Assembly: GCF_964188315.1 (NCBI RefSeq)
Contig: NC_135655.1
Span: 132,742,001 to 132,806,000 of the forward strand
Direction of reading: 5' to 3'
DNA length: 64,000 nt
Source of the DNA: Podarcis muralis
Taxonomy: Eukaryota
A program made the position numbers and the translations under genes. The notes below the pieces were generated by a model. It saw only the letters and a list, made by a program, of their open reading frames with translations, did not search any database and was not told the origin of the DNA. Position 1 is the stretch's first letter. Each line of letters opens with the position of its first letter. Positions 3,601-52,300 of the stretch are shown piece after piece.

Positions 3601-6600
3601 CATTAAAATCTTCCCTATACTGGGCTGCCCTCAGATGTCTTCTAAAAAGTCAGATAGTTGTTTATTTCCTTGACATCTGGTTGCAGCGTGTTCCACAAGG
3701 ACGATGCCACTACCAAGAAGGCCCTTTGCAACCTCGCTTCGCTGTAACATCACTTCTTGCAATGAGGGAACCGCCAGAAGGCCCTCGGAGCTGGTGGTGG
3801 AAATGCTCTTTCAGGTATACAGGATTCTTTGGGAGGCACCATACCTGTTTAAAGTGGTATGATACTGCTTTAAATGTACAGTGCAGATGGGCCTGCAACG
3901 GATACTGAAACCTGGGAACTATTTCTGAATGTTATCAAGTTATTGCACCGTACCAGGGCCAGATGGTTTTACAGAAGAATATTACAAAACATTTATTAAG
4001 GGATTAGCATATAATTTTTGGACGCGGGTGGCGCTGTGGGTTAAAGCCTCAGCGCCTAGGACTTGCCGATCGAAAGGTTGGCGGTTCGAATCCCCGCGGC
4101 GGGGTGCGCTCCCGTTGCTCGGTCCCAGCGCCTGCCAACCTAGCAGTTCGAAAGCACTCCCGGGTGCAAGTAGATAAATAGGGACCGCTTACTAGCGGGA
4201 AGGTAAACGGCGTTCCGTGTGCTGCGCTGGCTCGCCAGATGCAGCTTGTCACGCTGGCCACGTGACCCGGAAGTGTCTGCGGACAGCGCTGGCCCACGGC
4301 CTATAGAGTGAGATGGGCGCACAACCCTAGAGTCTGTCAAGACTGGCCCGTACAGGCAGGGGTACCTTTACCTTTACCTAGCATATAATTTGTTAGAAGA
4401 AATAAATTAAGTAATGCAATATTTCCCCCTCAAGAAGGGATTAAGTCAAACAGGTGGTAAAACAAAAAAGAACCACTATTTCTCTAGAATAGAGTATTAT
4501 TAACCTATTGCTTTCCTGAACCAATATTACAAAATATGGACCACGATTCTGATCAAAAGTTTAAATACAATTATTGGTAAATACATTAAAGAACATCAGC
4601 TGCAGTTTATTAAAATCTACAAATATCAGAACCCATTTGATTATAATTAGTTTTTGGATGCTTTGGGGGGGGGTTGGTGTGTTTTATTGGGACAACACTC
4701 TACTCAATTTGTAAAATCTTTCCATGAATAGAACAAGCAGTCATCTAAAGAAAGGTCTTGCACTGAGAGCTGCCATTAAATCTGGCTACCTTTTGAAGTA
4801 AGCGTGCAAATTCCTTGCAAACATTTGCAGATGCAATTGAGGTCTCAGTGATTCCAAAACCAAATTAGTAACGTTTGTGCAAAATGATAGCTATAGTAAA
4901 CAAACAGTACTATTGGCTCACAAGAAAAGTTCTAACCCGACAGAAATAATTCTTGAGATTTAGATTTTAAAGCTGGTTGTATGAATGACTGCTGCAACTC
5001 CAAGTGAGATTTCCAATGATTCATCAAATCCTGCTTTATGGGATTCACTTCAGTTTTTGCAGCCTTTTATTTCTGACAAGGTGCTTCTGACTATGCACCT
5101 ACCAATGTGCTGTTGCAAGCCTTGCCCTTCATGTCTGATTAAACCTAGCCAAGGGAGAATGGTAGAGATAGGTACAAGTCCTAGAGGTTATGCGCAGGAC
5201 AAGGCACGGATCCTCACACACTGGGCTGGTACCCAAGGTGGGCCGTGACAAAAATATGGCTGCCATGTTGGACTCGCCCTGAAGCACTACATGTGTTGCC
5301 TTGGGCTACAACAAGCTTTTCTGATTAGACACTAATTTTATCCATTTCCATTTGGCGGGAGAAAGGCATGAGACGTCATCCATAAGATCTGAATTTCTGG
5401 CCAACCGTACGTCCCATTTTCCTATAACTAAGCCTCTAGTGATAGAGCACGACATGGAGCAAGGACACTCTATTCATTTTCTAACCCATCTCTATGACAT
5501 TCTGGATGTCACCAGGGTCAAAAGTGTGCTGGAATGCAGATGTGTCAGCAATACAGTGGTACCTCGGGTTAAGTACTTAATTCGTTCCGGAGGTCCGTTC
5601 TTAACCTGAAACTGTTCTTAACCTGAAGCACCACTTTAGCTAATGGGGTCTCCTGCTGCTGCTGCCCCGCGATTTCTGTTCTCATCCTGAAGCCAAGTTC
5701 TTAACCCGAGGTAATATTTCTGGGTTAGCGGAGTCTATAACCTGAAGCGTATGTAACCCGAGGTACCACTGTAGTTGCCAGGATGGCAGCAGCGGCTGGG
5801 GTCCCAGGAAGAGACATCTGGAGTCTGGTGGAGGCGGAAGTGGGAGCTGGAGGGAGCAGGGATGCCAGGGGAATCCTCACCTCACTCCCTATGACAGGAC
5901 TGGGTCAGAATAAAAGTTCCTTGGCGGGCAGAGAGAGAGGGGAGATCCATTTCGGGATCTCTGTTCTCTGTTGTCCAGTTCTGGGCACCACAGTTCAAGA
6001 AGGACACTGACAAACTGGAACGTGTCCAGAGGAGGGCAACCAAAATGGTCAAAGGCCTGGAAACGATGCCTTATGAGGAACGGCTAAGGGAGCTGGGCAT
6101 GTTTAGCCTGGAGAAGAGGAGGTTAAGGGGTGATATGTTAGCCATGTTCAAATATATAAAAGGATGTCACATAGAGGAGGGAGAAAGGTTGTTTTCTGCT
6201 GCTCCAGAGAAGCGGACACGGAGCAATGGATCCAAACTACAAGAAAGAAGATTCCACCTAAACATTAGGAAGAACTTCCTGACAGTAAGAGCTGTTCGAC
6301 AGTGGAATTTGCTGCCAAGGAGTGTGGTGGAGTCTCCTTCTTTGGAGGTCTTTAAGCAGAGGCTTGACAACCATATGTCAGGAGTGCTCTGATGGCGTTT
6401 CCTGCTTGGCAGGGGGTTGGACTTGATGGCCCTTGTGGTCTCTTCCAACTCTATGATTCTATGATTCTATGGTGTCCCTGGTGCCGTTTCCTTTCTCTCT
6501 GCTTCACATCCATCGCCCTCCTTTTCAGAACATCTGCTCCGGCTGCAGGAGCGTTACGAGGGGACAGCGCTGTCCTCTCTCTCTGCCGGTGGCAGGTGAG

Positions 6601-6876
6601 GCGCCGCGAGTCCCGCCAGAGCAACGGGCGGGCGAAGGAGGGAGGCGGGCGGGCGGGCATCCTCCACGCCCCGCCCCGCGGAGACGCGAAGCTGCCCCGG
6701 ACCCTCCGGACCCCGCGCAGCCCCGCCCGGCTCCCTTCGCCACAACCGAGAGGAAACGCCGCGCCCCCGCCTCGCAGAGACCTGACCGAGGGGGACGCGC
6801 CTCACCTGTCCCGCTCCGGCGTGGCCTGGCCGGCGGGCGGCGCCTCCGTCTTCCTGGGGGTCCTGGGGGTCGCCAT
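560..6876 (-). CDS. RB1: Retinoblastoma protein, 5' part (coding exons 1-3: 6876-6806, 2141-2027, 669-560); gene continues beyond the left edge
   Basis: Spliced translation [99 protein letters not shown]. The WGICIFxAAxDLDExxFTFTEL motif is characteristic of RB1 exon 3. GT-AG junctions with phases 2, 0, 2 as in human; adjacent to ITM2B. Confidence 0.95.
1105..1468 (-). mobile_element. Sauria SINE, full length, young subfamily (RB1 intron 2)
   Basis: Pol III A box (TGGCGCTGTGG) and B box (GGTTCGAATCC), (CCTTTA)n tail; 13-bp TSD CATATCTAGACAT at 1092-1104 and 1471-1483. Confidence 0.93.
2027..2141 (-). CDS. RB1: RB1 exon 2 (115 bp)
   Basis: cttccttAG acceptor, GTAAGT donor; FxALCDAL...VRxxAWxTYEKVS resembles RB1 exon 2; phase 2 in, phase 0 out. 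Confidence 0.93.
2766..2841 (+). mobile_element. tRNA-derived SINE head (Squam3/MIR-like), degraded
   Basis: GGTTAGAGTGTCGG...GGGAGACCTGGGTTCAAATCCCCACTCAGCCATGAAG with B box. Confidence 0.6.
3501..3825 (-). mobile_element. L2-clade LINE 3' end with (TAAA)n tail
   Basis: Same 3'UTR as the copies at 37868 and 43580 (CCAGCCAGATG..., AGACATCTGA.GGCAGCCC). Confidence 0.8.
3930..4620 (+). mobile_element. Old L1 ORF2 relic, interrupted by a SINE
   Basis: [14 protein letters not shown] matches the L1 ORF2 PGPDGF motif; degraded continuation after 4391. Confidence 0.55.
4020..4378 (+). mobile_element. Sauria SINE, full length, young subfamily (RB1 intron 1)
   Basis: A and B boxes, CCTTTA tail; 13-bp TSD TAGCATATAATTT at 4005-4017 and 4379-4391. 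Confidence 0.93.
5552..5773. mobile_element. Tigger/pogo-type MITE (family A)
   Basis: TA-flanked TIRs CAGTGGTACCTCGGGTTA...TAACCCGAGGTACCACTG. Confidence 0.85.
5972..6471 (+). mobile_element. CR1 LINE 3' end, 5'-truncated
   Basis: ORF2 C-terminus [16 protein letters not shown]...[18 protein letters not shown]; (ATTCTATG)n tail. Confidence 0.93.
6806..6876 (-). CDS. RB1: RB1 exon 1, coding part (71 bp)
   Basis: ATG in strong Kozak context (gggATGG), TPRKT motif as in the human N-terminus, AG|GTGAG donor of phase 2 matching exon 2, inside a CpG island. Confidence 0.88.
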
Positions 6877-6944
6877 CCCGGGCGCCGCCACAGCCGGACC
6901 AGCCTCCCACCGGCGCCCGCGGCTCCCGCCCCTCCTTCCGGCAG

Positions 6945-6970
6945 ATTCCCGCCCCCTGCGTCACTTCCTG
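6945..6970 (-). promoter_or_regulatory. RB1 core promoter: ETS/GABP (GGAAGT) + ATF (TGACG) + E2F-like (GGCGGGAA) sites
   Basis: Minus strand reads CAGGAAGTGACGCAGGGGGCGGGAAT; GGAAGTGACG matches the known human RB1 promoter core; 70-95 bp upstream of the ATG. Confidence 0.75.
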
Positions 6971-7224
6971 GGCAGAAGGTCGCCGCCCGGGCGCTGCCGC
7001 TCGCAAAGCATGCCGGGCTGCCCCGGCCCGGGGCGGCGGCGGAGCCTCGGCAGGCGGTGGGCGCCGAGCGGGGCAGAGAGCCGGGTCCTGCGGGCCTGTG
7101 GCCAGCGCTGCTCCCGTAGAAGCGGGGCCTCGAGTGGGACGCTGCGCCAAGAGGCACTTTCTTCCTTCTGCCCCGACCCTTTTGAAGCGAGGTGGGGCCA
7201 GAACTGGGCACCAGTTTTATTCTC

Positions 7225-7736
7225 TCTCTTTTTTTTTAAAGAGATGTTTATTAAGCATTTAAAGATTACAAAAAACATAAAAAGAAAACACAATAAAAAA
7301 TTAACAAACATACATCACAGTACATCTAAAATAAAGAAAAAACATAAACAACAGCAAAAAGAAGAAAAAACATTAAAACACATCCAATATTTCATAACTT
7401 TACCTTTCATTTACTTATTTCCTCGACCTCCTCACACCTCCCTTTTTGCATTCTAGTTCAATTTACTATTTCAGCAAATTCTTTCCATCTTTCTCAATTT
7501 TTGTTCTATAATTTACCTTAACCCAATCTGACTTTAAATTTTACACTTTGGCCCATTAACAATCCATTTTTACTTTATTCTTTATAACATTTCTGCTAAA
7601 ACCATGTAACTTCATTCCAGCATCCTTCTAACATTCATTAATTTTACTATATTTTTGTAAATATACATTGAATTTTTTCCAATCTTCTTCCACTGACTCT
7701 TCTCCCTGGTCTCGGATTCTGCCAGTCATTTCTGCC
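7225..7736 (-). mobile_element. L1 3' fragment inserted in the RB1 upstream region
   Basis: Poly(T) at the left end; ORF2 end homologous to the 8415 copy; 17-bp TSD GCACCAGTTTTATTCTC at 7208-7224 and 7737-7753. Confidence 0.9.
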
Positions 7737-7894: not shown

Positions 7895-10681
7895 TACCAT
7901 ATTTTTCGCTCTATAGGACGCACCGGACCATAGGAGGGGGAGAACGGGGGGGGGGGATTCTCCCCCTCTCTGCTTAGCACCCCTTCAGCGAAGCAGCAGG
8001 AGAGACGGGGCCCCTTCCATTTCTCCTCCAGCTTCGCTGAAGGGGCGCTGCGCAAAGGGAAAACTGCAGCGCCTCTCCAGTGAAGCGAAGCCTGGAGAGC
8101 AAGAGGGATCGGTGTGCACTGACCCCTCTCTCTCTCTCCAGGCTTCAGGCGGCTATCCGCAAGCCTTTGGAGTGCAGCGGGAACTCCTGCTGCGCACCGA
8201 AGGCTTGCGGATAGCTGCCTGAAGCCCCCGGAACGCAGCGGGAGTTCCCACTGCACTCCGGGGGCTTCATGCAGCTTCAGCGAAAGCAACGCAAAGCCTC
8301 CGGAGCGCAGGGGAGCACTCCCTCTGCGCTTCGGAGGCTTCGCGTTGCTATCGCTGAAGCCAAGGAGCCTGCATTCGCTCCATAAGACGCAAACACATTT
8401 CCCTTTAATTTTTGTGTTTTTTTAAATAAAATATTTATTAGAGATTTTAAACATTATAATCAGCCGACACATATAAACCCATCACCAACATACAATAAAC
8501 AAAAAAAAGACATAAAAAAGAAAAAGTTAACACATAATACAAAAAACATAACCATATTTTCTTAACTTTTTGCACTTCCTCACATCTCTCGTTCCTGCGT
8601 TCCTGGTTTGTAAAATTTTAAACAGCAAATTATCACCTTGTTTCAATTCTTATTTTATATTCTTCCAATATTCTGTCTCTAATTTTGAATACTTTTATCA
8701 AAAACTTAAATACTTAATTTAGACGTAACATTACTCCAAAATTTATCTTCTTCTCTAATCTCACCTATTCTCATATCCCTTTCAGCTAGTTTGCTGGTGC
8801 CCTGTTATTTTCAATCTTGCATCCTTCCTAGCATTCGTACACTTTACAGTATTTTTGTAAGTAGTCCTTAAATTTCCTCCAATCCTCTTCCACTGCTTCT
8901 TCTCCCAGGTCTCGGATTCTGCCAGTCATTTCTGCCAGTTCCATATAGTCTATCAGCTGCATCTGCCATTCTTCCAGCATGGGTAAATCTTGGGTCTTCC
9001 AGTGTTTAGCAATGAGTATCCTTGCTGCAGTTGTTGCATACATAAGAAATGTTCGATCCTTCTTTAACACCCTCTGGTCAACAATGCCCAAAAGGAAGGC
9101 CTCTGGTTTCTTAGGAAAGGTATATTTAAATACCTTTTTCAACTCGTTATATATCATTTCCCAGAAAGCCTTAACCCTAGGGCAGGTCCACCAGAGGTGA
9201 AAGAACGTTCCTTCAGTTTCTTTACATTTCCAACATTTATTATCAGGCAGGTGATATATTTTTGCAAGCTTGACTGGGGTCATGTACCACCTATATATCA
9301 TTTTCATAATATTTTCTTTTAGGGCATTACATGCCGTGAACCTCACACCGGTGGTCCATAACCTTTCCCAGTCAGCAAACATAATATTGTACCCAATGTC
9401 CTGTGCCCATTTTATCATAGCTGACTTAACAGTTTCATCCCGAGTATTCCATTTTAACAGCAAGTTATACATTTTTGAAAGTACCTTGGTCTTAGGTTCT
9501 AACAGTTCTGTTTCTAACTTCGATTTTTCCACCTGGAATCCTATCTTTTTATCTAACTTGAAGGCCTCTTTGATCTGAGCATAATGTAGCCAATCTCGCA
9601 CTTTATCTTTTAATTTCTCCAAACTCTGCAACCTCCAAGTATCTCCATCCTTTTCTAATATTTCCCAATATTTCGGCCATTTGGCCTCCATATTGAGTCT
9701 TTTCTGGGCCTTGGCTTCCATTGGTGACAGCCACCTTGGGGTCTTATTTTCTAATAAGTCTTTGTATTTTGTCCAGACATTGAACAATGCTTTCCTGACA
9801 ATGTGGTTCTTGAAAGCCTTATGATTTTTAACCCTGTCGTACCACAAGTATGCATGCCATCCAAAAACATTATTAAATCCTTCCAAATCTAAGACATCAG
9901 TGTTTTCAAGAAGTAGCCAGTCCTTCAACCAGCAGAAAGCTGCTGATTCATAGTACACCCTTAAGTCCAGCAGGGCAAACCCCCCTCTTTCTTTAGCATC
10001 AGTTAATATTTTAAACTTAATTCTGGGCTTTTTGCCCTGCCAGACAAATTTAGAGATATCTCTCTGCCACCTCTTGAAGCACTCCACTTTATCCACAATC
10101 TGTAAGGTCTGAAATAGAAACAGCATTTTTGGCAATACATTCATCTTTATAGCAGCAATTTGGCCCAACAAGGAAAGTTTCAATCTAGACCAACCTTCTA
10201 AATCCCTTTTAATTTCAGACCAGCACTTTTCATAGTTGTCTTTAAATAGACTTAAGTTCTTGGCTGTTATGTTTACCCCTAGGTATCTCCCTTTTTAACC
10301 ACATTTAAATCTGTCTCTTTCTGAAACCTTTCTGATTCTGAAGGTGTCAAATTTTTCCCCAATACCTTAGTCTTTTGCTTGTTTAATTTAAATCCCGCCA
10401 CCCGACCAAACTCATGAATCAATTGTAGTACTCTTTTCGTACTAGATTCTGGCTCCTGTAATGTCAAAATCAGGTCATCTGCAAACGCTTTAAGTTTGTA
10501 CTGTTTGGCTCCGACCTGAATTCCTTCAACCAACCGGTCCCCTCTAATCATATTCAAGAGCACCTCCAGGACCGAAATGAACAACAAAGGGGAAATAGGG
10601 CAACCTTGTCATGTTCCTTTTTCATTTCCCCTTAATTTTTGAAGGGGGAAAGGTGCGTCTTATAGAGCGAAAAATACGGTA
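7895..10681. mobile_element. Tc1/mariner (Tc2-like) MITE split by an L1 insertion (arms 7895-8414 and 10623-10681)
   Basis: TA-flanked TIRs CC(A/G)TATTTTTCGCTCTATA...TATAGAGCGAAAAATACGG; same family as 13757 and 43285. Confidence 0.8.
8415..10622 (-). mobile_element. L1 LINE, 5'-truncated (RT domain to 3'UTR), young
   Basis: QGCPISPLLF, AFADDL and C-terminal CWKC...HLWWTC zinc knuckle; 451-aa open segment; 19-bp TSD (1 mismatch) at 8396-8414 and 10623-10641; 1-bp frameshift near 10293. Confidence 0.95.
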
Positions 10682-38479: not shown

Positions 38480-38830
38480 CGTCTGCGCCTGCGCTACGAA
38501 ACCTGGAGCCGCCATTTTTGGATCGGGAAAAGTGGAGGGGCGTGGCCCGGAGGCTCACTGGCGATTGGCGCAGCTGAGGCAATGGTCCCGCCCCCATTGG
38601 GCCAGGCGACGGAGGAGAGCCCCGCCCTTTCCGGTATGGCCTGCGGCCGGGGGCGCCCCGGCGTGGGCGTCGGAGTGGTGGTCGTCAGCTCTGCCCACCC
38701 AGGATGCGTCCTCCTCGGCCAGAGGAAGAGCGCTGTCGGCGCCGGCCTGTTCCAGCTCCCCGGAGGACACCTAGAGTTCGGGTAGGCCTGCGCGGGGCGA
38801 TGACGCCATTCTGCGTCGTCATCAGGCGAC
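38480..38830 (+). promoter_or_regulatory. NUDT15 CpG-island promoter (NRF1-like 38484-38494, YY1 38509-38518, ATTGG boxes 38564 and 38596, GC box 38619-38627)
   Basis: Motifs read directly: TGCGCCTGCGC, CCGCCATTTT, two ATTGG, GCCCCGCCC, TTTCCGG immediately before the ATG. Confidence 0.65.
38636..38781 (+). CDS. NUDT15: NUDT15 exon 1, coding part (146 bp)
   Basis: [48 protein letters not shown](G), then GTAGGC donor. Confidence 0.9.
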
Positions 38831-40648
38831 CTCCGCTGAGGGGCTGGGAGGCAGCAGGCCTGGCAGAAGAGAGATCTCTTGGGATCTGCTCCCCGATTTC
38901 AGTCACTCAGAAAAATCTCTAGTGTCCTAAAAAGAAAGCTAAATCAGGCCCCTATGTTCGTGCAAACTTCGCCTTCTGGTGCAGCCTTATTGCTGGTAGT
39001 GATTTCTTTGGGAACAATATCTTATATTTATATTTTCCTGACTTGGACCAATCACCTCATCTACCGCAAAAGGCTGCCGTGAAGTTCTATAGGAAGTATA
39101 AAATGTCCGCAAAGGGGGACGTGGTGCTTGTCTCATAGGCATCACAGTTTGGTTCCTTTCACCAGACTGATACATCTTAGTACTGCACTATGAAGGGTCA
39201 TGCCTTCTGCTTCCCCACTTTCAAATTAAAGGTAAAGGGACCCCTGACCATTAGGTCCAGTCGTGACCGACTCTGGGGTTGCGGCGCTCATCTCGCTTTA
39301 TTGGCCGAGGGAGCCGGCGTACAGCTTCCGGGTCATGTGGCCAGCATGACTAAGCCGCTTCTGGCGAACCAGAACAGCGCACGGAAACGCCGTTTACCTT
39401 CCCACCAGAGCAGTACCTATTTATCTACTTGCACTTGACGTGCTTTCGTACTGCTAGGTTGGCAGGAGCAGGGACCGAGCAACGGGAGCTCACCCCGTCG
39501 CGGGGATTCGAACCGCCGACCTTCTGATTGGCAAGACCTAGGCTCTGTGGTTTAACCCACAGTGCCACCCGCGTCCCTTACTTTCAAATTAGTACAGCTC
39601 TAATTCGCCCCACTTGTGTTCAATTCAGCTAACTCCTAGGTGTGTGCAGGGGATTGCTTCCAAAGAGGAGCTCTCTCTACTATTTTACTTTTATTTTGGT
39701 TGGTTTTAAAAGAGGATTAGACAATTTCATGGAGGATAAGGCTACCAAGAGCTGCTAGCCATGATGGCTATGCTCTGCCTCCATGGTCGCAGGCAGTTTG
39801 CTGCTGAATATTAGTTGCTGAAAATAACAGGGAGGCGGACTGCTATTGCGCTCAGGTCCGGCTTGCAGACTTTCAGTAGGCATCTGGTTGGTTACTGAGA
39901 AGAGGATGAGCCACATCCAGCAGACATTTTCCCACCTTCGCCGCATCAAGCAGTTGGTCCCTTACCTTTCCCGCCCCGACCTGGCCACAGTGATCCATGC
40001 GACGGTCATGTCCAGGCTTGACTACTGTAATTCGCTCTACGCGGGGCTGCCCTTGAAGCTGGCCCAGAAACTCCAGCGGGTGCAGAATGCTGCAGCGAGG
40101 CTCCTCACGGGGTCTTTGCCATGGGAGCATATTCACCCAGTGCTTTTCAAGCTGCACTGGCTCCCGGTGGAGTACAGGGTCAGATTTAAGGTGCTGGTTT
40201 TGACCTTTAAAGCCCTTCACGGCCTAGGACCCTCGTACCTACGGGACCGCCTCTCCTGGTATGCCCCACGGAGAGCCTCAAGGTCCATAAATAGCAACAC
40301 CCTAGTGGTCCCGGGCCCTAAGGAAGTTAGATTAGCCTCAACCAGAGCCAGGGCCTTCTCAACTCTGGCTCCTGCCTGGTGGAACGCTCTGCCTCATGAG
40401 ACCAGGGCCCTGCAAGACTTGACATCTTTCCACAGGGCCTGCAAGATGGAGCTGTTCTGCCTGGCCTTTGGCTTGGAGCCAGTTTGATTCCCGCCCCCTC
40501 TTTCTTTTTTCCTTTCTCCTCCTGTGAAGTGGCTGCATCTTAATATTTTAATGTTTCAATATTTTAATGTTGTATTTTAATTTTGTTTTTAAGTTGTAAT
40601 CATTCAACTTGTTTTTATTATTGCTTGTAAGCTGCTCTGAGCCCGGCC

Positions 40649-40690
<42 letters not shown>

Positions 40691-42099
40691 TTAATCATCT
40701 GACTGGACTGGATGACTTATCCCCCCTGCAAACCCAATAGAATTGGTCACGGCCAGTTGCTTGAGTACAGGGAAAACACCCCCCCCCATTTTAAATGACC
40801 TAATGGATCCATGTTTTTCATATCTTTGATTCTTTTGAGCCCCCTCTTCACGCCTATATTGTCCCTTAAATGGGCGGGGGGGAGGGCAAAGCCATTCAAT
40901 TACCATCTTTCATGCGGCTTCATGGCTAAGAAGCTGGGCTCTTACTTCAAGCAAATAGAACTGATTATTGCCTTCTCAGTAGAAATAGTATTTCTTTTTT
41001 CTTCTTGCTGTTTAGTGAAAGCTTGGCAGAATGTGCAGAAAGAGAGGTTTTGGAAGAGACAGCCTTGCACCTAACAAACGTTCGCTTTGCATCAACTGTA
41101 AATTCTGTTAGTCTGAAGGATAATTACCACTATGTAACGATCTTAATGAAAGGAGAGGTGGATATGAATTATGAATCTGAACCAAAGAATCTGGAACCTG
41201 ATAAAAATGAAAGTAGGATATTATATTTTTTACTCTTCAGTGAGCATTAGGTAGTTTCTGTAACCACATTCTCTGCATAGTATTAATGTAAGATTATAGT
41301 TTTCTTGTATCATGTATGAAAATGCTGATTTTTTTACTGTTTTTGGTGAGATTTAGGCTGCGACCTTATAAAGTATTACCTTGGGAGTAGACTAGGGTTG
41401 CCATATCTTGAAGAGCAAAAAAGAGGACAGCCCAAGATGGAGAAAGAGGGGTACAGATGCGCATGCCTCTTTCGCCAGCTTGGGTTGGCAGTGGCCGGGC
41501 ATGCAGACCATGTGCGCCTCTTTCCCTGGTTCAGGCTGGCACCGGCCGTGGCATGCAGAGCAGCGGTTGCACAAGAGAAAAATAAATAACCCCTAAACCC
41601 AGACATTTCCTTTAAAATGTAAAAATCTCCCCAGATGGGCATGTTTGCCCCCCAAAAGAGAGGACATGTCTGGGATTAGCCAGACGTATGGCAACCCTAG
41701 ATTAGGCTCTATTCTTTCCAAGATGGGATGGCATTTTGATGGGGACCACATTGTGTGGATGCCGCAAAATACTTGCATGCTTGAGTGGCACCAAGTACAC
41801 AATAAACTGGGTGGAAGCACTCAAATTCAAATGCATCCTGACCCTAGGGATGAAAATATTTGGGTGTTACCTGAGCCAGGTCATAGTTCTGACTTCTGAA
41901 CTTGCAGTAGCTATCATCATTTCTCTCTTTTTCTTTGTTTACAGGTTGGGAATGGGTAAAATGGGAAGAGTTTCCTTCAGCAGATCAACTGTTCTGGGCT
42001 TTATGCTGCTTAAAAGAACAAGGTTACAATCCTTTCACAGAAGAATTTAATCACCTTGTGGGATACACTGGAAATCATTGTGTGAAAAAAGAGTGCTAA
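38636..42099 (+). CDS. NUDT15: Nudix hydrolase 15 (MTH2), complete, 165 aa; exons 38636-38781, 41016-41212, 41945-42099
   Basis: [10 protein letters not shown]...[28 protein letters not shown] (Nudix box)...[14 protein letters not shown]...EPx[36 protein letters not shown] junctions, phases 2 and 1; 197-bp exon 2 as in human. An in-frame upstream ATG at 38582 is possible but lies among promoter motifs. Confidence 0.96.
39229..39577 (-). mobile_element. Sauria SINE, full length, second subfamily (NUDT15 intron 1)
   Basis: 12-bp TSD ACTTTCAAATTA at 39217-39228 and 39580-39591; 3' region differs from the other copies (GGGACCCCTGACCATTAGGTCC). Confidence 0.93.
39702..39907 (+). mobile_element. 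Old CR1 3' fragment
   Basis: TTTAAAAGAGGATTAGACAA.TTCATGGAGGATAAGGCTA, the end of CR1 ORF2 and start of the 3'UTR. Confidence 0.65.
39908..40690 (+). mobile_element. L2-clade LINE 3' part, second subfamily (NUDT15 intron 1)
   Basis: Open ORF2 C-terminus ([14 protein letters not shown]...[12 protein letters not shown]...HWLPV) to TGA at 40487; (TTA)n tail. Confidence 0.9.
41016..41212 (+). CDS. NUDT15: NUDT15 exon 2 (197 bp, Nudix box)
   Basis: tttAG acceptor, GTAGGA donor; REVLEE motif. Confidence 0.97.
41393..41699. mobile_element. hAT (Blackjack-like) MITE in NUDT15 intron 2
   Basis: TIRs TAGGGTTGCCATA / TATGGCAACCCTA; degenerate 8-bp TSD GAGTAGAC / GATTAGGC. Confidence 0.85.
41945..42099 (+). 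CDS. NUDT15: NUDT15 exon 3, coding part (155 bp, TAA stop)
   Basis: Long pyrimidine tract plus acAG; (S)[50 protein letters not shown]. Confidence 0.96.
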
Positions 42100-42375
42100 A
42101 TTTACTACATGGGAAATATGTGTTTTTACAGAGACATTTATTTGTAAAATGAATTCTGTATCACCTGGGAGGGGGTAGTTTTATCTAAGCATGAAGTCAG
42201 CTACTTCCACCAAATGTAGCAATAATCCTTGACACTAAACATGCAGCTTTTTTTTGCCTCTACTCTTCAATCTACAATGGCAAGTAAGATTTTGATGTAA
42301 TAGATATGCACTATTACAAAGCAAGTGTGCAAGAGGATGCAGTAGAGCAGCTTTCCTGAAAGCGTGATGAGCGCT

Positions 42376-49300: not shown

Positions 49301-52300
49301 GACTCAAAATGGAGCACGATCGACTTCTGAAAAAGGTTCACAAACCGGAGCATTTCCGGGTTTGCAGTGTTTAGGTTCCAAGTTGTTTGAATACCAAGGC
49401 GTTTGAGAACCAAGGTACCACTATACTGTTTCAAACATATTAAGCCACCCTTAGCTTAGTGATTGCATGCTAAATAGCAGTACCAGAATGTTACCCACAA
49501 CAAATATCACTTCTTTGACCATGTTGTTTTTGTTGATAAAACATTTACTAAAATTGAAATCATAAATGTATTTTTGTTCTCCCTGTTAAATTAGCTGTTG
49601 GCCAACTAAAGCACATATACACTATTTGAAACAGCTCTAATGATTTGATTCAGTGAAGAAGTTTCATTTCTCTCATTTCCCATTACCTGGCAGTCTGCCT
49701 GCTGCAAGTGCATCGCCTGGCAAGTGTCCGTTGACACCATTTGCTGATGGGTTGTTCATCTGACCCAGCAAACCACTCCTCATCTCCAGATCAGTTGGGT
49801 ATGGCCTCCGAGGGTCACCTTAAAAATAAACAATTGGTTTGCAATGCTTTCTTTTTTAAAACAGATTTTTATTAAAGATTTCTTGGTTTAGAAAAGTATG
49901 TGCAATGTCTCTTTTTTCAAGTTGAATTTTCTACAGTTTCATTTGTTGTGAGACATTTGTGTTACATTAGGAAGAAAAGGGGGAAAGAGGTGGAGGGANN
50001 NNNNNNNNNNNNNNNNNNNNNNNNNNNNNNNNNNNNNNNNNNNNNNNNNNNNNNNNNNNNNNNNNNNNNNNNNNNNNNNNNNNNNNNNNNNNNNNNNNNN
50101 NNNNNNNNNNNNNNNNNNNNNNNNNNNNNNNNNNNNNNNNNNNNNNNNNNNNNNNNNNNNNNNNATCGTGAAGCTGAGGCTCCAATACTTTGGCGACCTC
50201 ATGAGAAGAGAAGACTTCCTGGAAAAGACCCTGATGTTGGGAAAGATGGAGGCACAAGGAGAAGGGGACGACAGAGGACGAGATGGTTGGACAGTGTTCT
50301 CGAAGCTACCAGCATGAGTCTGACCAAACTGCGGGAGGCAGTGGAAGACAGGAGTGCCTGGCGTGCTCTGGTCCAGGGGGTCACAAAGAGTCGGACACAA
50401 CTAAACGACAACACATATACATATACGTATACGTATATATGTGTGTGTGTGTGTATATAGCAAGACAACTATCCAATCTCCATCAATCATCTTTCCTTTT
50501 AACCACTGTTCACCTAGCAGCACGCAGCATATCTGCTACATAGAAAAGTGTGTTTCGCTGCATCTGCCTGTGAAATTCAGCCAAAACTTGTACACAAAGT
50601 ATAAGCAGAGATAAAACATTTTTAGATCCATTTTCCAGTGAAAATACAGCATGTCAAACGTTTAATTGTGAAACGTGTTACCTGGCACCCATGTCAGAGG
50701 AGCGCAAACAGCATTGCTGGCACTAATTCTATGAGCATATTTAATTATTTCTTCAGATGAAACTGCCCCTGTGAGAAGTGGAGAAAAAAAGATGCAGTAG
50801 GTAAAAAGCCTCATCTCTGCATTATGAGATTCAAAAGCCAGTGTTTCAGGAGGAAAAGCTGTCACTGCTCGTTTCCTGAGCCACCAACTCCCCCTCATTT
50901 TCTCACCCTTGCACACTGATTTTTAGACTTGTACACATTGTAGACCACTACTGTGGATTTTTTTGGGGGGGCAGATCACTATATGTTCTTATGTTATGGC
51001 TTAGTATGTAGGAGGCTGCCTGGAAGTTTCCAAATTAAAACAATTCCTTCCTGTTTATTAGACCATTCTGTTCTGCACTCCAATGCAGATGTCATGAACA
51101 CATGGGTGTAACTAAATTTATATGTGCTGGTGGCAGTGATTAACAACCAAGCAAGTTTCTAATTGTTGCATGGTTTGTAATCAGAAACCTAGCTGAAGTA
51201 AAGTGTGTGTGTTGCATCTAGATGCCAACTACATCCTTTTTTCTATTTTGGATACTGTCAGGGTCATAGAGTCAGGAAGGGGGTCTTGTAGACCATCTTG
51301 TTCAAGAAGAGCCTTTTAAATAATTGGCAGTATTGTCAAACTGTTCTTATCCATCAAGCAGTTTCTCCTAATCTTCAAATGAAAACTACTCCTCTGTAAC
51401 CTAAGCCCATTAGATCTCAGGGTAGCTGAGTACAACTCTTTGCCATCTTCAAATATCTATAGAAGAGTGTCATCATGTCCAGGATGCTAAACTGAAAATA
51501 TATTTTAGGAAATTATGTCTACAGGAATGTTTGTGTGTTTGCATGCATCTGTAACTGTTTATCTAACTGCCATATGTGGTTTGGGAGATGCAACTTTTTA
51601 AAACTGAAAAAGCATTATATACGTTTCACAGTCTCACACACATATATAATTTATATATATATATTTTTTTGGGAGGGTGGTGGCCAAAGTTGTGTTTTTT
51701 TGTTTTATTTTTTAAAGAAAACAAGATTGTTGAACTTTTTCTTGGGACATTACTGACCACCCTTGCCTACTTGACACATTTACTTGAGACAATTAAAAGG
51801 TTTTCGATATGTAAAGATATAAATGCTAGAAGAACAGATTGAATAAAATCCAACAGTGAGTTGAATTAGATTTCTTTGGAAATTAATCCAAAAATTTGTT
51901 TAACATTTGTAAAGATACAATACTATACATATATTTTCCATGTAATAAGATCTGTCATTAGTTGTCATTTAAATGCTTATTTTCTAGATGATCTTTAATA
52001 GCAGTTTTTCACTGGAAAGCTATTACACAAGAGATATAATCACCACACGTCAAATGTAGTTGTGGAAACTGGCCGTAGAACTTCCTAAAACACACTGAAA
52101 ATATAATACTCACCTTTTCTTGCCTTTTCTATTGTTTTCAGTTTTTCTTTTGCTTGATAAACAGCTGTGGCCTATATTAAAAAAATACTTTCATTGGCGA
52201 ACAAATATGTAACCAGAGTTTAGTACAAGAGAATTCCCATACTAGTTGAACTAAATGTTTTGCAAGTTGACCAAACATTTGACAGTATCTTAAGAATACC

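What the first reader, a model, noticed from the sequence alone, without database searches (positions are those of the whole stretch)
42001..42012. Lizard NUDT15 encodes Cys at the human Arg139 position (the R139C thiopurine-toxicity residue)
Seen: exon 3 reads [16 protein letters not shown], with codon TGC at 42004-42006. Known: human reads LDQLFWGLRCLKEQGY (R139-C140), and R139C is the main NUDT15 loss-of-function allele; it destabilises the protein by losing the R139-D132 contact. The D132 equivalent is retained here, and the frame, Nudix box and splice sites are intact, so the gene does not look like a pseudogene. Inference: this is either a fixed 'human disease allele as wild type' with compensating changes (the neighbouring G137 is A, and there is a C-terminal extension with two extra Cys), or a CpG transition (CGC>TGC) segregating in this individual. 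If fixed, it is a natural model for suppressors of R139C.
Basis: partly seen in the sequence, partly recalled or inferred. Interest (0 to 1): 0.75.

Follow-up and report, generated by a model that had tools for sequence, protein, structure and literature searches.

The report
Lizard NUDT15 wild-type Cys at Arg139
The wall lizard's NUDT15 enzyme really does carry, as its normal fixed residue, the cysteine that in people is the drug-toxicity allele R139C, but the same cysteine is also normal in most frogs and two other reptiles, so this is an ordinary lineage difference and not a rarity.

Summary
The window holds a three-exon NUDT15 gene on the + strand (38636-38781, 41016-41212, 41945-42099; 165 aa). 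Its exon translations equal the RefSeq protein of Podarcis muralis. Codon TGC at 42004-42006 aligns with human Arg139.

It is neither an assembly error nor a segregating variant. Contigs from three further DNA runs of three studies, and raw RNA reads, all carry T. Podarcis raffonei, P. lilfordi and Lacerta agilis also read TGC. The closest Arg-bearing relatives sampled (Rhineura, Hemicordylus, python, Emydura) read CGC, so the change was a CpG transition on the lacertid stem.

The gene is expressed, its Nudix box is intact, and dN/dS is 0.08-0.20.

The residue is not deeply conserved. It is Ala in 24 of 25 fishes and Cys in 16 of 22 amphibian sequences, all 16 of them frogs (Xenopus included). 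Arg holds in all 25 birds and 38 of 40 mammals. Cys also arose independently in a skink and a side-necked turtle.

The compensators it proposed (A137, C-terminal cysteines) do not track Cys139. Two other lacertid-stem changes, at human positions 42 and 153, match the amphibian states. They are weak, untested candidates.

This is a new example of a known kind, the compensated pathogenic deviation. Interest is low to moderate.

The parts
38636..38781 (+). NUDT15 exon 1 coding part. ATG at 38636; ends in GG + GT donor (phase 2). Encodes residues 1-48 and the first two bases of Gly49.
   Evidence: The translation is identical to residues 1-49 of P0115 (Podarcis muralis XP_028559820.2). RNA depth is about 13 in bins 38600-38847 and 0 in 38848-39095.
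41016..41212 (+). NUDT15 exon 2 (AG acceptor, GT donor). It holds most of the Nudix box (E50, R58, E59, E62, E63 = human E54, R62, E63, E66, E67).
   Evidence: RNA depth is 11-16 over 40956-41203 and about 1 beyond.
41945..42099 (+). NUDT15 exon 3 coding part, ending in stop TAA at 42097-42099. The 3'UTR continues beyond 42300.
   Evidence: RNA depth is 15-27 over 41948-42300 with first mates on the - strand, as expected for a + strand RNA in most stranded libraries.
42004..42006 (+). Codon TGC = Cys135 of the lizard protein = human Arg139 position. This is the finding itself.
   Evidence: All four lacertids and Tiliqua read TGC. Rhineura, Hemicordylus, Liasis and Emydura read CGC, and Anolis reads CGT.
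38765..38781 (+). Start of the Nudix box (G44...), which continues in exon 2 to 41067.
   Evidence: Pfam PF00293 NUDIX, E = 9.3e-18, 65 bits against a cutoff of 21.1.
38747..38749 (+). Codon CTG = Leu38 (human Ser42 position). This is a lacertid-stem change (L or M) away from the Thr-dominated (T/A/S/Y) states of other lepidosaurs; Met is the amphibian state. Candidate partner of Cys135, untested.
42046..42048 (+). Codon TTT = Phe149 (human Leu153 position). This is a lacertid-stem change away from the Leu of all other lepidosaurs sampled. Phe is the state of amphibians, Pelusios and most turtles. Candidate partner of Cys135, untested.
41185..41187 (+). Codon AAG = Lys106, polymorphic with AGG (Arg) through A>G at 41186.
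   Evidence: G is seen in 10 of 10 RNA reads of X23 and in the X11 contig. The older P. muralis protein P0031 and the other lacertids have Arg.

Best explanation
The window carries the functional NUDT15 orthologue of Podarcis muralis, and Cys at the human-Arg139 position is its fixed wild-type residue. The change was a C>T transition at a CpG (CGC>TGC). It happened on the stem of the sampled lacertids (Podarcis and Lacerta), after their split from amphisbaenians. It has since been kept while the rest of the protein stayed under purifying selection. It is tolerated because Arg139 is not a universal requirement of the fold. Arg is an amniote-specific state: fishes use Ala and most frogs use Cys. 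In human NUDT15 the Arg side chain only clamps the short eta3 turn to helix alpha2 through main-chain oxygens. Whether that clamp is needed depends on the surrounding sequence. This makes the case a compensated, or context-tolerated, pathogenic deviation. Shown here: the residue, its fixation, its age, the mutational path, expression, the constraint on the gene, and the distribution across vertebrates. Inferred: that the lizard protein is adequately stable and active, and which residues make that possible. Candidates are the lacertid-stem changes at human positions 42, 153, 21 and 64.
For: Identity and gene model: the three exon translations map exactly onto P0115, P. muralis NUDT15. Pfam NUDIX hit. 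AF2 model pLDDT 90, rmsd 0.8 A and TM 0.91-0.97 to human NUDT15 5bon. Fixation: contigs of X3, X8 and X11 (three studies) cover exon 3. Their difference counts are fully accounted for by SNPs at 41763, 41781, 41840 and 41910, none at 42004. Raw RNA reads at about 19x list no alternative. Age and path: TGC in P. muralis, P. raffonei, P. lilfordi and L. agilis; CGC in Rhineura, Hemicordylus, Liasis and Emydura; CGT in Anolis. In the gene tree the lacertids (100/99) sit with Rhineura + Salvator. Tiliqua and Pelusios lie elsewhere. Constraint: NG86 dN/dS is 0.08-0.20 within lacertids and 0.10-0.16 between Arg-bearing squamates. Population SNPs are three synonymous and one conservative K106R. Column across vertebrates: fish 24 Ala + 1 Ser; amphibians 16 Cys, 3 Ser, 1 Thr, 1 Ala, 1 Arg; birds 25 of 25 Arg; mammals 38 of 40 Arg; reptiles Arg except lacertids, Tiliqua and Pelusios. 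Structural role of Arg139, and the R139C Tm loss of 9.4 C in the human background: PMC8079283.
Against: No stability or activity measurement exists for any Cys-bearing orthologue, so 'tolerated' rests on conservation, expression and dN/dS only. Logan contigs can drop minor alleles, and only one raw-read run (RNA) was laid, so a rare Arg allele in the species is not excluded. Tiliqua and Pelusios each rest on a single assembly or annotation. Only four lacertid species of two genera were available. The depth of the change within Lacertidae (Gallotiinae, Eremiadini) is therefore unknown.
Confidence: 0.85

Rival explanations
1. Uncompensated hypomorph. The lacertid Cys destabilises the enzyme much as in humans. 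It drifted to fixation, helped by CpG hypermutability, because the amount of NUDT15 is only weakly selected. No suppressor exists.
For: The human R139C allele is common: 7,399 of the 8,871 gnomAD individuals with any NUDT15 variation carry it. The deep-mutational-scan authors argue that drug-metabolism genes are not under strong selection (10.1101/740837). The same CpG change recurs in Tiliqua and Pelusios, and a His at this site occurs in Dugong. That pattern fits mutation pressure plus weak selection. Tiliqua carries Cys without the 42 and 153 changes.
Against: The gene as a whole stays under purifying selection in lacertids (dN/dS 0.08-0.20). Cys has been retained in four species, and across frogs, without decay of the gene. 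Arg is kept in 25 of 25 birds and 38 of 40 mammals despite the hypermutable CpG, so the site is selected at least in some backgrounds.
Confidence: 0.25
2. Assembly error, or a heterozygous or rare variant of the sequenced individual.
For: CpG transitions are the commonest polymorphisms. An older annotation of this species' gene was flagged 'LOW QUALITY PROTEIN', and an older model has a frameshifted C-terminus.
Against: T at 42004 is found in contigs of three other DNA samples from three studies and in RNA reads. The same TGC is found in three other lacertid species' assemblies. No indel is seen in exon 3 in any run.
Confidence: 0.02
3. Adaptive gain. The adjacent pair Cys135-Cys136 (human 139-140) acts as a redox-sensitive switch on helix alpha2.
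For: The CC pair recurs in lacertids, Tiliqua, Pelusios and most frogs. A Cys139-Cys140 disulphide was once proposed for the human variant (PMC5355121; discussed in PMC8079283).
Against: The 1.4 A structure of human R139C shows the Cys139 thiol pointing away from Cys140, with no disulphide (PMC8079283). Pelobates (CS) and Spea (CG) have Cys139 without Cys140. Cys140 is ancestral and also present with Arg or Ala.
Confidence: 0.04

Closest known systems
Human NUDT15 p.Arg139Cys (c.415C>T), the main thiopurine-intolerance allele
   Same: The same residue sits at the same aligned position, in helix alpha2, next to Cys140 and downstream of the eta3 turn. The mutational path, C>T at a CpG, is also the same (PMC8079283).
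   Different: In humans it is a polymorphic allele that lowers Tm by 9.4 C and lowers abundance (PMC8079283; 10.1101/740837). Here it is the fixed wild type of a whole lizard group, in a protein 74% identical to the human one. Its effect in this background is unmeasured.
Compensated pathogenic deviations (CPDs): human disease residues that are wild type in other species
   Same: [quoted passage not shown] CPDs are typically of mild impact, which matches a destabilising but non-catalytic variant.
   Different: The human allele is pharmacogenetic, not disease-causing without the drug. No compensating substitution has been demonstrated here.
Anuran NUDT15 (for example Xenopus laevis, Hyla, Bufo, Pelobates)
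   Same: Wild-type Cys at the same column, mostly also followed by Cys. It is accompanied by Met at human position 42 and Phe at 153, states that lacertids also acquired.
   Different: In amphibians the column is variable (C, S, T, A, R) on that background. In frogs Cys probably replaced a non-Arg residue and not Arg.
Tiliqua scincoides and Pelusios castaneus NUDT15
   Same: Independent Arg>Cys at the same site among reptiles. Tiliqua reads TGC, against CGC in the related cordylid. Pelusios has Cys against Arg in Emydura.
   Different: Each is a single species and assembly. Tiliqua lacks the 42 and 153 changes. For Pelusios only the protein was available.

Membership tests
NUDT15 (Nudix hydrolase 15) orthologue | Nudix domain and Nudix box with catalytic Glu/Arg residues | tested here: met
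   Pfam PF00293, 65 bits against a cutoff of 21.1. G44, E50, R58, E59, E62 and E63 are present and lie in invariant or nearly invariant columns of 69 orthologues.
NUDT15 (Nudix hydrolase 15) orthologue | Best and collinear similarity to NUDT15 and not to MTH1 or other Nudix proteins | tested here: met
   Exon 3 against PDB: human NUDT15 at E = 7e-22, next family (plant NUDX1) at 1.6e-3. The model matches human NUDT15 at rmsd 0.8 A and 74% identity, and MTH1 only at TM about 0.6. The exon translations are identical to RefSeq P. muralis NUDT15.
NUDT15 (Nudix hydrolase 15) orthologue | Three coding exons with the same breakpoints as in other squamates and a turtle (a gene with introns, not a retrocopy) | tested here: met
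   The same three protein blocks were found in ten loci. GT/AG sites are present. RNA depth follows the exons.
NUDT15 (Nudix hydrolase 15) orthologue | Hydrolysis of 6-thio-(d)GTP / dGTP | not testable with these tools
Compensated pathogenic deviation | Residue identical to a deleterious human allele at the orthologous position | tested here: met
   Human effect from PMC8079283 and 10.1101/740837.
Compensated pathogenic deviation | The residue is the fixed wild type in the other species, and the gene is functional there | tested here: met
   Reads from four runs. Four lacertid species. Expression. dN/dS 0.08-0.20. Function itself is inferred, not assayed.
Compensated pathogenic deviation | Identifiable compensatory substitution(s) | tested here: inconclusive
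Lacertid-stem changes at human positions 42 and 153 match amphibian states: 2 of 4 private sites against 3 of 54 in other lepidosaur lineages, p = 0.034, post hoc. Tiliqua lacks both. Residue distances could not be measured because no coordinates were available.
Pseudogene or retrocopy of NUDT15 | Loss of introns, a broken frame, or relaxed constraint | tested here: not met
   Introns are present, the frame is open over 165 codons, the gene is transcribed, and dN/dS is well below 1.

The most novel reading that the evidence does not exclude
The lacertid stem acquired a coupled set of changes that recreates the amphibian configuration of this corner of the fold: Leu/Met at human position 42, Cys at 139 and Phe at 153, perhaps with Val at 21 and 64. 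One or more of these would be natural suppressors that could restore stability to human R139C.
Probability: 0.15. Interest if true: 0.5.

Novelty: new member of a known kind. Interest (0 to 1): 0.25.

Why it matters
NUDT15 R139C is one of the most clinically used pharmacogenetic variants. It acts by destabilising the protein. Cys is the normal residue in lacertid lizards, a skink, a turtle and most frogs, and Ala is normal in fishes. Arg139 is therefore a background-dependent requirement of amniote NUDT15, not a universal one. This cautions against reading the site as 'conserved'. It also gives several natural backgrounds, including Xenopus, in which suppressors of the instability could be looked for. 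Beyond that, the case is an ordinary example of a well-described phenomenon, and every sequence involved is already in public annotation.

Tried and rejected
(1) Assembly error or heterozygosity: rejected by the reads and by three other lacertid assemblies.

(2) Pseudogene: rejected.

(3) G137A as compensator: rejected. The position is A, P, G or S irrespective of residue 139, and mouse has Ala with Arg (PMC8079283).

(4) C-terminal extension cysteines as compensators: rejected. The terminal ...EC occurs in Arg-bearing Rhineura. Cys160 is Tyr in L. agilis and P. lilfordi.

(5) A strict endotherm/ectotherm rule (Arg needed only at high body temperature): weakened. Most reptiles keep Arg, while Dugong (His) and Jaculus (Gln) do not.

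(6) A single origin of Cys in squamates: rejected. Arg/CGC is found in Rhineura, Salvator and Hemicordylus, and the gene tree separates the lineages.

(7) Per-variant deep-mutational-scan scores for positions 42, 139 and 153: not obtainable. No supplementary tables are held, and the PNAS version is not in the library.

(8) Earlier notes of this scan near the locus: none.

(9) A literature search for prior mention of Cys139 in frogs or lizards found nothing relevant.

(10) Pfam scan of the eight longest other ORFs in the window: no hits.

Full report
**Observation**

The + strand around the finding holds the last coding exon of a Nudix hydrolase gene. After an AG acceptor at 41943-41944 the frame reads [27 protein letters not shown]... 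and stops at TAA 42097-42099. The first Cys of the CC pair is TGC at 42004-42006. A phmmer search of this exon against all PDB chains aligns it without gaps to residues 120-163 of human NUDT15. The best-scoring chain is 7b65, the human R139C mutant, because the lizard Cys falls exactly on residue 139.

**Gene model and identity**

Exon 1 is 38636-38781, exon 2 is 41016-41212 and exon 3 is 41945-42099. The splice sites are GT/AG and the frame is open for 498 nt (165 codons). I joined the exons in scripts only, to number codons, to find the frame and to map window coordinates.

For full-length searches I used database proteins. The three exon translations map exactly onto P0115 (XP_028559820.2, Podarcis muralis NUDT15), so the window is P. 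muralis. P0115 hits Pfam NUDIX at 65 bits. An AlphaFold2 model built on 69 orthologues has pLDDT 90. It superposes on human NUDT15 (5bon) at 0.8 A rmsd, TM 0.91-0.97 and 74% identity. Cys135 lies in helix alpha2, just after the short eta3 turn. All Nudix-box catalytic residues are present.

**Is the T real and fixed?**

I laid 38600-42300 on Logan contigs of three DNA runs from three studies (X3, X8, X11) and on raw reads of a bulk RNA-seq run (X23).
- The exon 3 contig of X3 has 0 differences from the window.
- The contig of X8 has 2 differences, both listed (41763, 41910).
- The contig of X11 has 3 differences, all listed (41781, 41840, 41910).
- None is at 42004, and these SNPs show that the contigs are different haplotypes.
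- The RNA reads cover exon 3 at about 19x and list no alternative base there.

RNA depth follows the three exons (about 13, 11-16 and 15-27) and drops to 0-2 in unique intron sequence. First mates lie on the - strand, as expected for a + strand transcript. The splice joints themselves were not among the rows shown.

Coding polymorphisms seen are synonymous at codons 23, 68 and 77, plus K106R.

Caveat: contigs can drop minor alleles, and the table of differences was truncated. A rare Arg allele is therefore not formally excluded.

**Comparative evidence**

Exon-only queries cannot use the word search because of its length window, so I ran the representative search with exon 3. I then ran the word search with the returned proteins P0014 and P0115, and a cluster look-up. 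I read the column in 146 named sequences.

- Lacertids: P. muralis, P. raffonei, P. lilfordi and Lacerta agilis all have Cys.
- Arg-bearing reptiles: Rhineura (amphisbaenian), Salvator (tegu), Hemicordylus (cordylid), snakes, Anolis, three geckos, tuatara, Emydura, eight cryptodire turtle species (ten sequences) and the gharial.
- Two further reptiles have Cys: Tiliqua scincoides and Pelusios castaneus.
- Birds: 25 of 25 Arg.
- Mammals: 38 of 40 Arg. Dugong has His and Jaculus has Gln.
- Primate 'NUDT15-like' entries: four of the five 'NUDT15-like' entries, the primate ones, have Cys; the fifth, from a seal, has Pro. They look like extra copies and were not pursued.
- Amphibians: 16 Cys (all frogs, including Xenopus laevis, Hyla, Bufo, Pelobates and dendrobatids), 3 Ser, 1 Thr, 1 Ala, 1 Arg.
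- Fishes, including coelacanth, lungfish, sharks, bichir and sturgeon: 24 Ala and 1 Ser.

Arg139 is therefore an amniote state, Ala is probably ancestral, and Cys is a common wild type outside amniotes.

**Mutational path and number of origins**

I fetched nine orthologous loci and mapped the exons. The codon is TGC in all four lacertids and in Tiliqua. It is CGC in Rhineura, Hemicordylus, Liasis and Emydura, and CGT in Anolis.

In a maximum-likelihood protein tree the lacertids (100/99) group with Rhineura + Salvator (90/93). Tiliqua lies outside that group and Pelusios sits among turtles. On the accepted squamate phylogeny (my knowledge), this means at least three independent Arg>Cys events among reptiles: the stem of the sampled lacertids, the Tiliqua lineage and the Pelusios lineage.

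**Constraint**

NG86 dN/dS was summed exon by exon over 150 complete codons.
- P. muralis against P. raffonei: 0.08.
- P. muralis against P. lilfordi: 0.14.
- P. muralis against L. agilis: 0.20.
- Pairs across or outside the Arg>Cys change: 0.10-0.16.

Counts are small, but there is no sign of relaxation after the substitution.

**How it probably works**

In the human enzyme R139C lowers Tm by 9.4 C and reduces activity in vitro and abundance in cells (PMC8079283; 10.1101/740837). The crystal structures show that Arg139, which is solvent exposed on alpha2, bonds the main-chain oxygens of Leu131 and Leu134 and pulls eta3 towards alpha2. Cys139 makes longer, weaker contacts and forms no disulphide with Cys140. 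An MD preprint found it at only 15% (apo) and 1.8% (holo) occupancy.

The contacts are to backbone atoms of a flexible surface turn. It is therefore plausible that other sequence backgrounds hold that turn without Arg, as fishes (Ala) and frogs (Cys) evidently do. This step is inference. No Cys-bearing orthologue has been measured.

**Compensators**

Position 137 is A, P, G or S regardless of residue 139. The terminal ...EC is shared with Arg-bearing Rhineura. Cys160 is Tyr in L. agilis and P. lilfordi.

Besides R139C, which Tiliqua shares, the core positions where all lacertids differ from every other lepidosaur sampled are T21V, T42L/M, T64V and L153F (human numbering). Met42 and Phe153 are the majority amphibian states, present in all 19 frogs compared. 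Val64 is the fish state.

Among other lepidosaur lineages only 3 of 54 private changes match the frog majority, against 2 of 4 for lacertids (3 of 5 if site 139 is counted). The one-sided hypergeometric p is 0.034. The test is post hoc and based on few events. Tiliqua has Cys without either change, and Phe153 also occurs with Arg in most turtles. I treat positions 42 and 153 as candidates only. I could not measure their distance to residue 139, because no coordinates are returned by the tools.

**Verdict**

- The 'segregating variant' branch and the proposed compensators are wrong.
- This is a new, clean example of a compensated (or context-tolerated) pathogenic deviation, a class defined in PMC6606640. 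It is not a new kind of thing.
- I found no paper noting it, but all the sequences are already publicly annotated.

The N run at 49999-50164 was left untouched.

Noticed in passing
window 41186 (codon 106, AAG/AGG): Nonsynonymous K106R polymorphism. The window has Lys. RNA run X23 (10 of 10 reads), the X11 contig, the older P. muralis protein and all other lacertids have Arg, so Lys looks like the derived allele segregating in P. muralis.
   Followed up: partly
window 42050-42152, compared with proteins P0121 and P0031: An older P. muralis model (UniProt A0A670HVM3) ends in a frameshifted tail that corresponds to the +1 frame ORF at 42078-42152. RefSeq version 1 was flagged 'LOW QUALITY PROTEIN'. 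The window's frame is intact and no run shows an indel in exon 3, so the older assembly probably had a 1-base error here.
   Followed up: partly
window 39220-39591, 39964-40707, 41328-41451, 41576-41699 (introns of NUDT15): Very high-copy interspersed repeats. Summed contig depth reaches thousands to millions, against about 10-45 in unique sequence. The first one is also abundant in RNA reads on both strands.
   Followed up: no
window 8831-10183 (- strand): A 451-codon open frame with no Pfam hit. Its C-terminal CWKC...H...C pattern looks, from my own recollection, like the tail of a LINE ORF2 protein. It is probably a retrotransposon fragment.
   Followed up: partly
window 6392-7456: A G+C-rich stretch with long overlapping open frames on both strands and no Pfam hit. 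It is probably a CpG island or promoter region of a neighbouring gene and not coding sequence.
   Followed up: no
window 38582-38584: An in-frame ATG lies 54 nt upstream of the annotated start and would add 18 residues. Some database models (P0121, P0122) start even further upstream. RNA reads cover 38600 onwards.
   Followed up: no
proteins P0134 (Dugong dugon) and P0139 (Jaculus jaculus): Dugong NUDT15 has His at the Arg139 position, the same residue as the human R139H risk allele, while the manatee has Arg. Jaculus has Gln. These are the only non-Arg states among the 40 mammalian sequences read.
   Followed up: no
proteins P0006, P0019, P0060, P0090, P0104, P0142: Several primate 'NUDT15-like' or unnamed mammal-like entries carry Cys at this position. 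Some have degenerate sequence and are probably retrocopies in which the same CpG decayed. They were not examined further.
   Followed up: no
window 49999-50164: A run of 166 N (assembly gap or masked).
   Followed up: no
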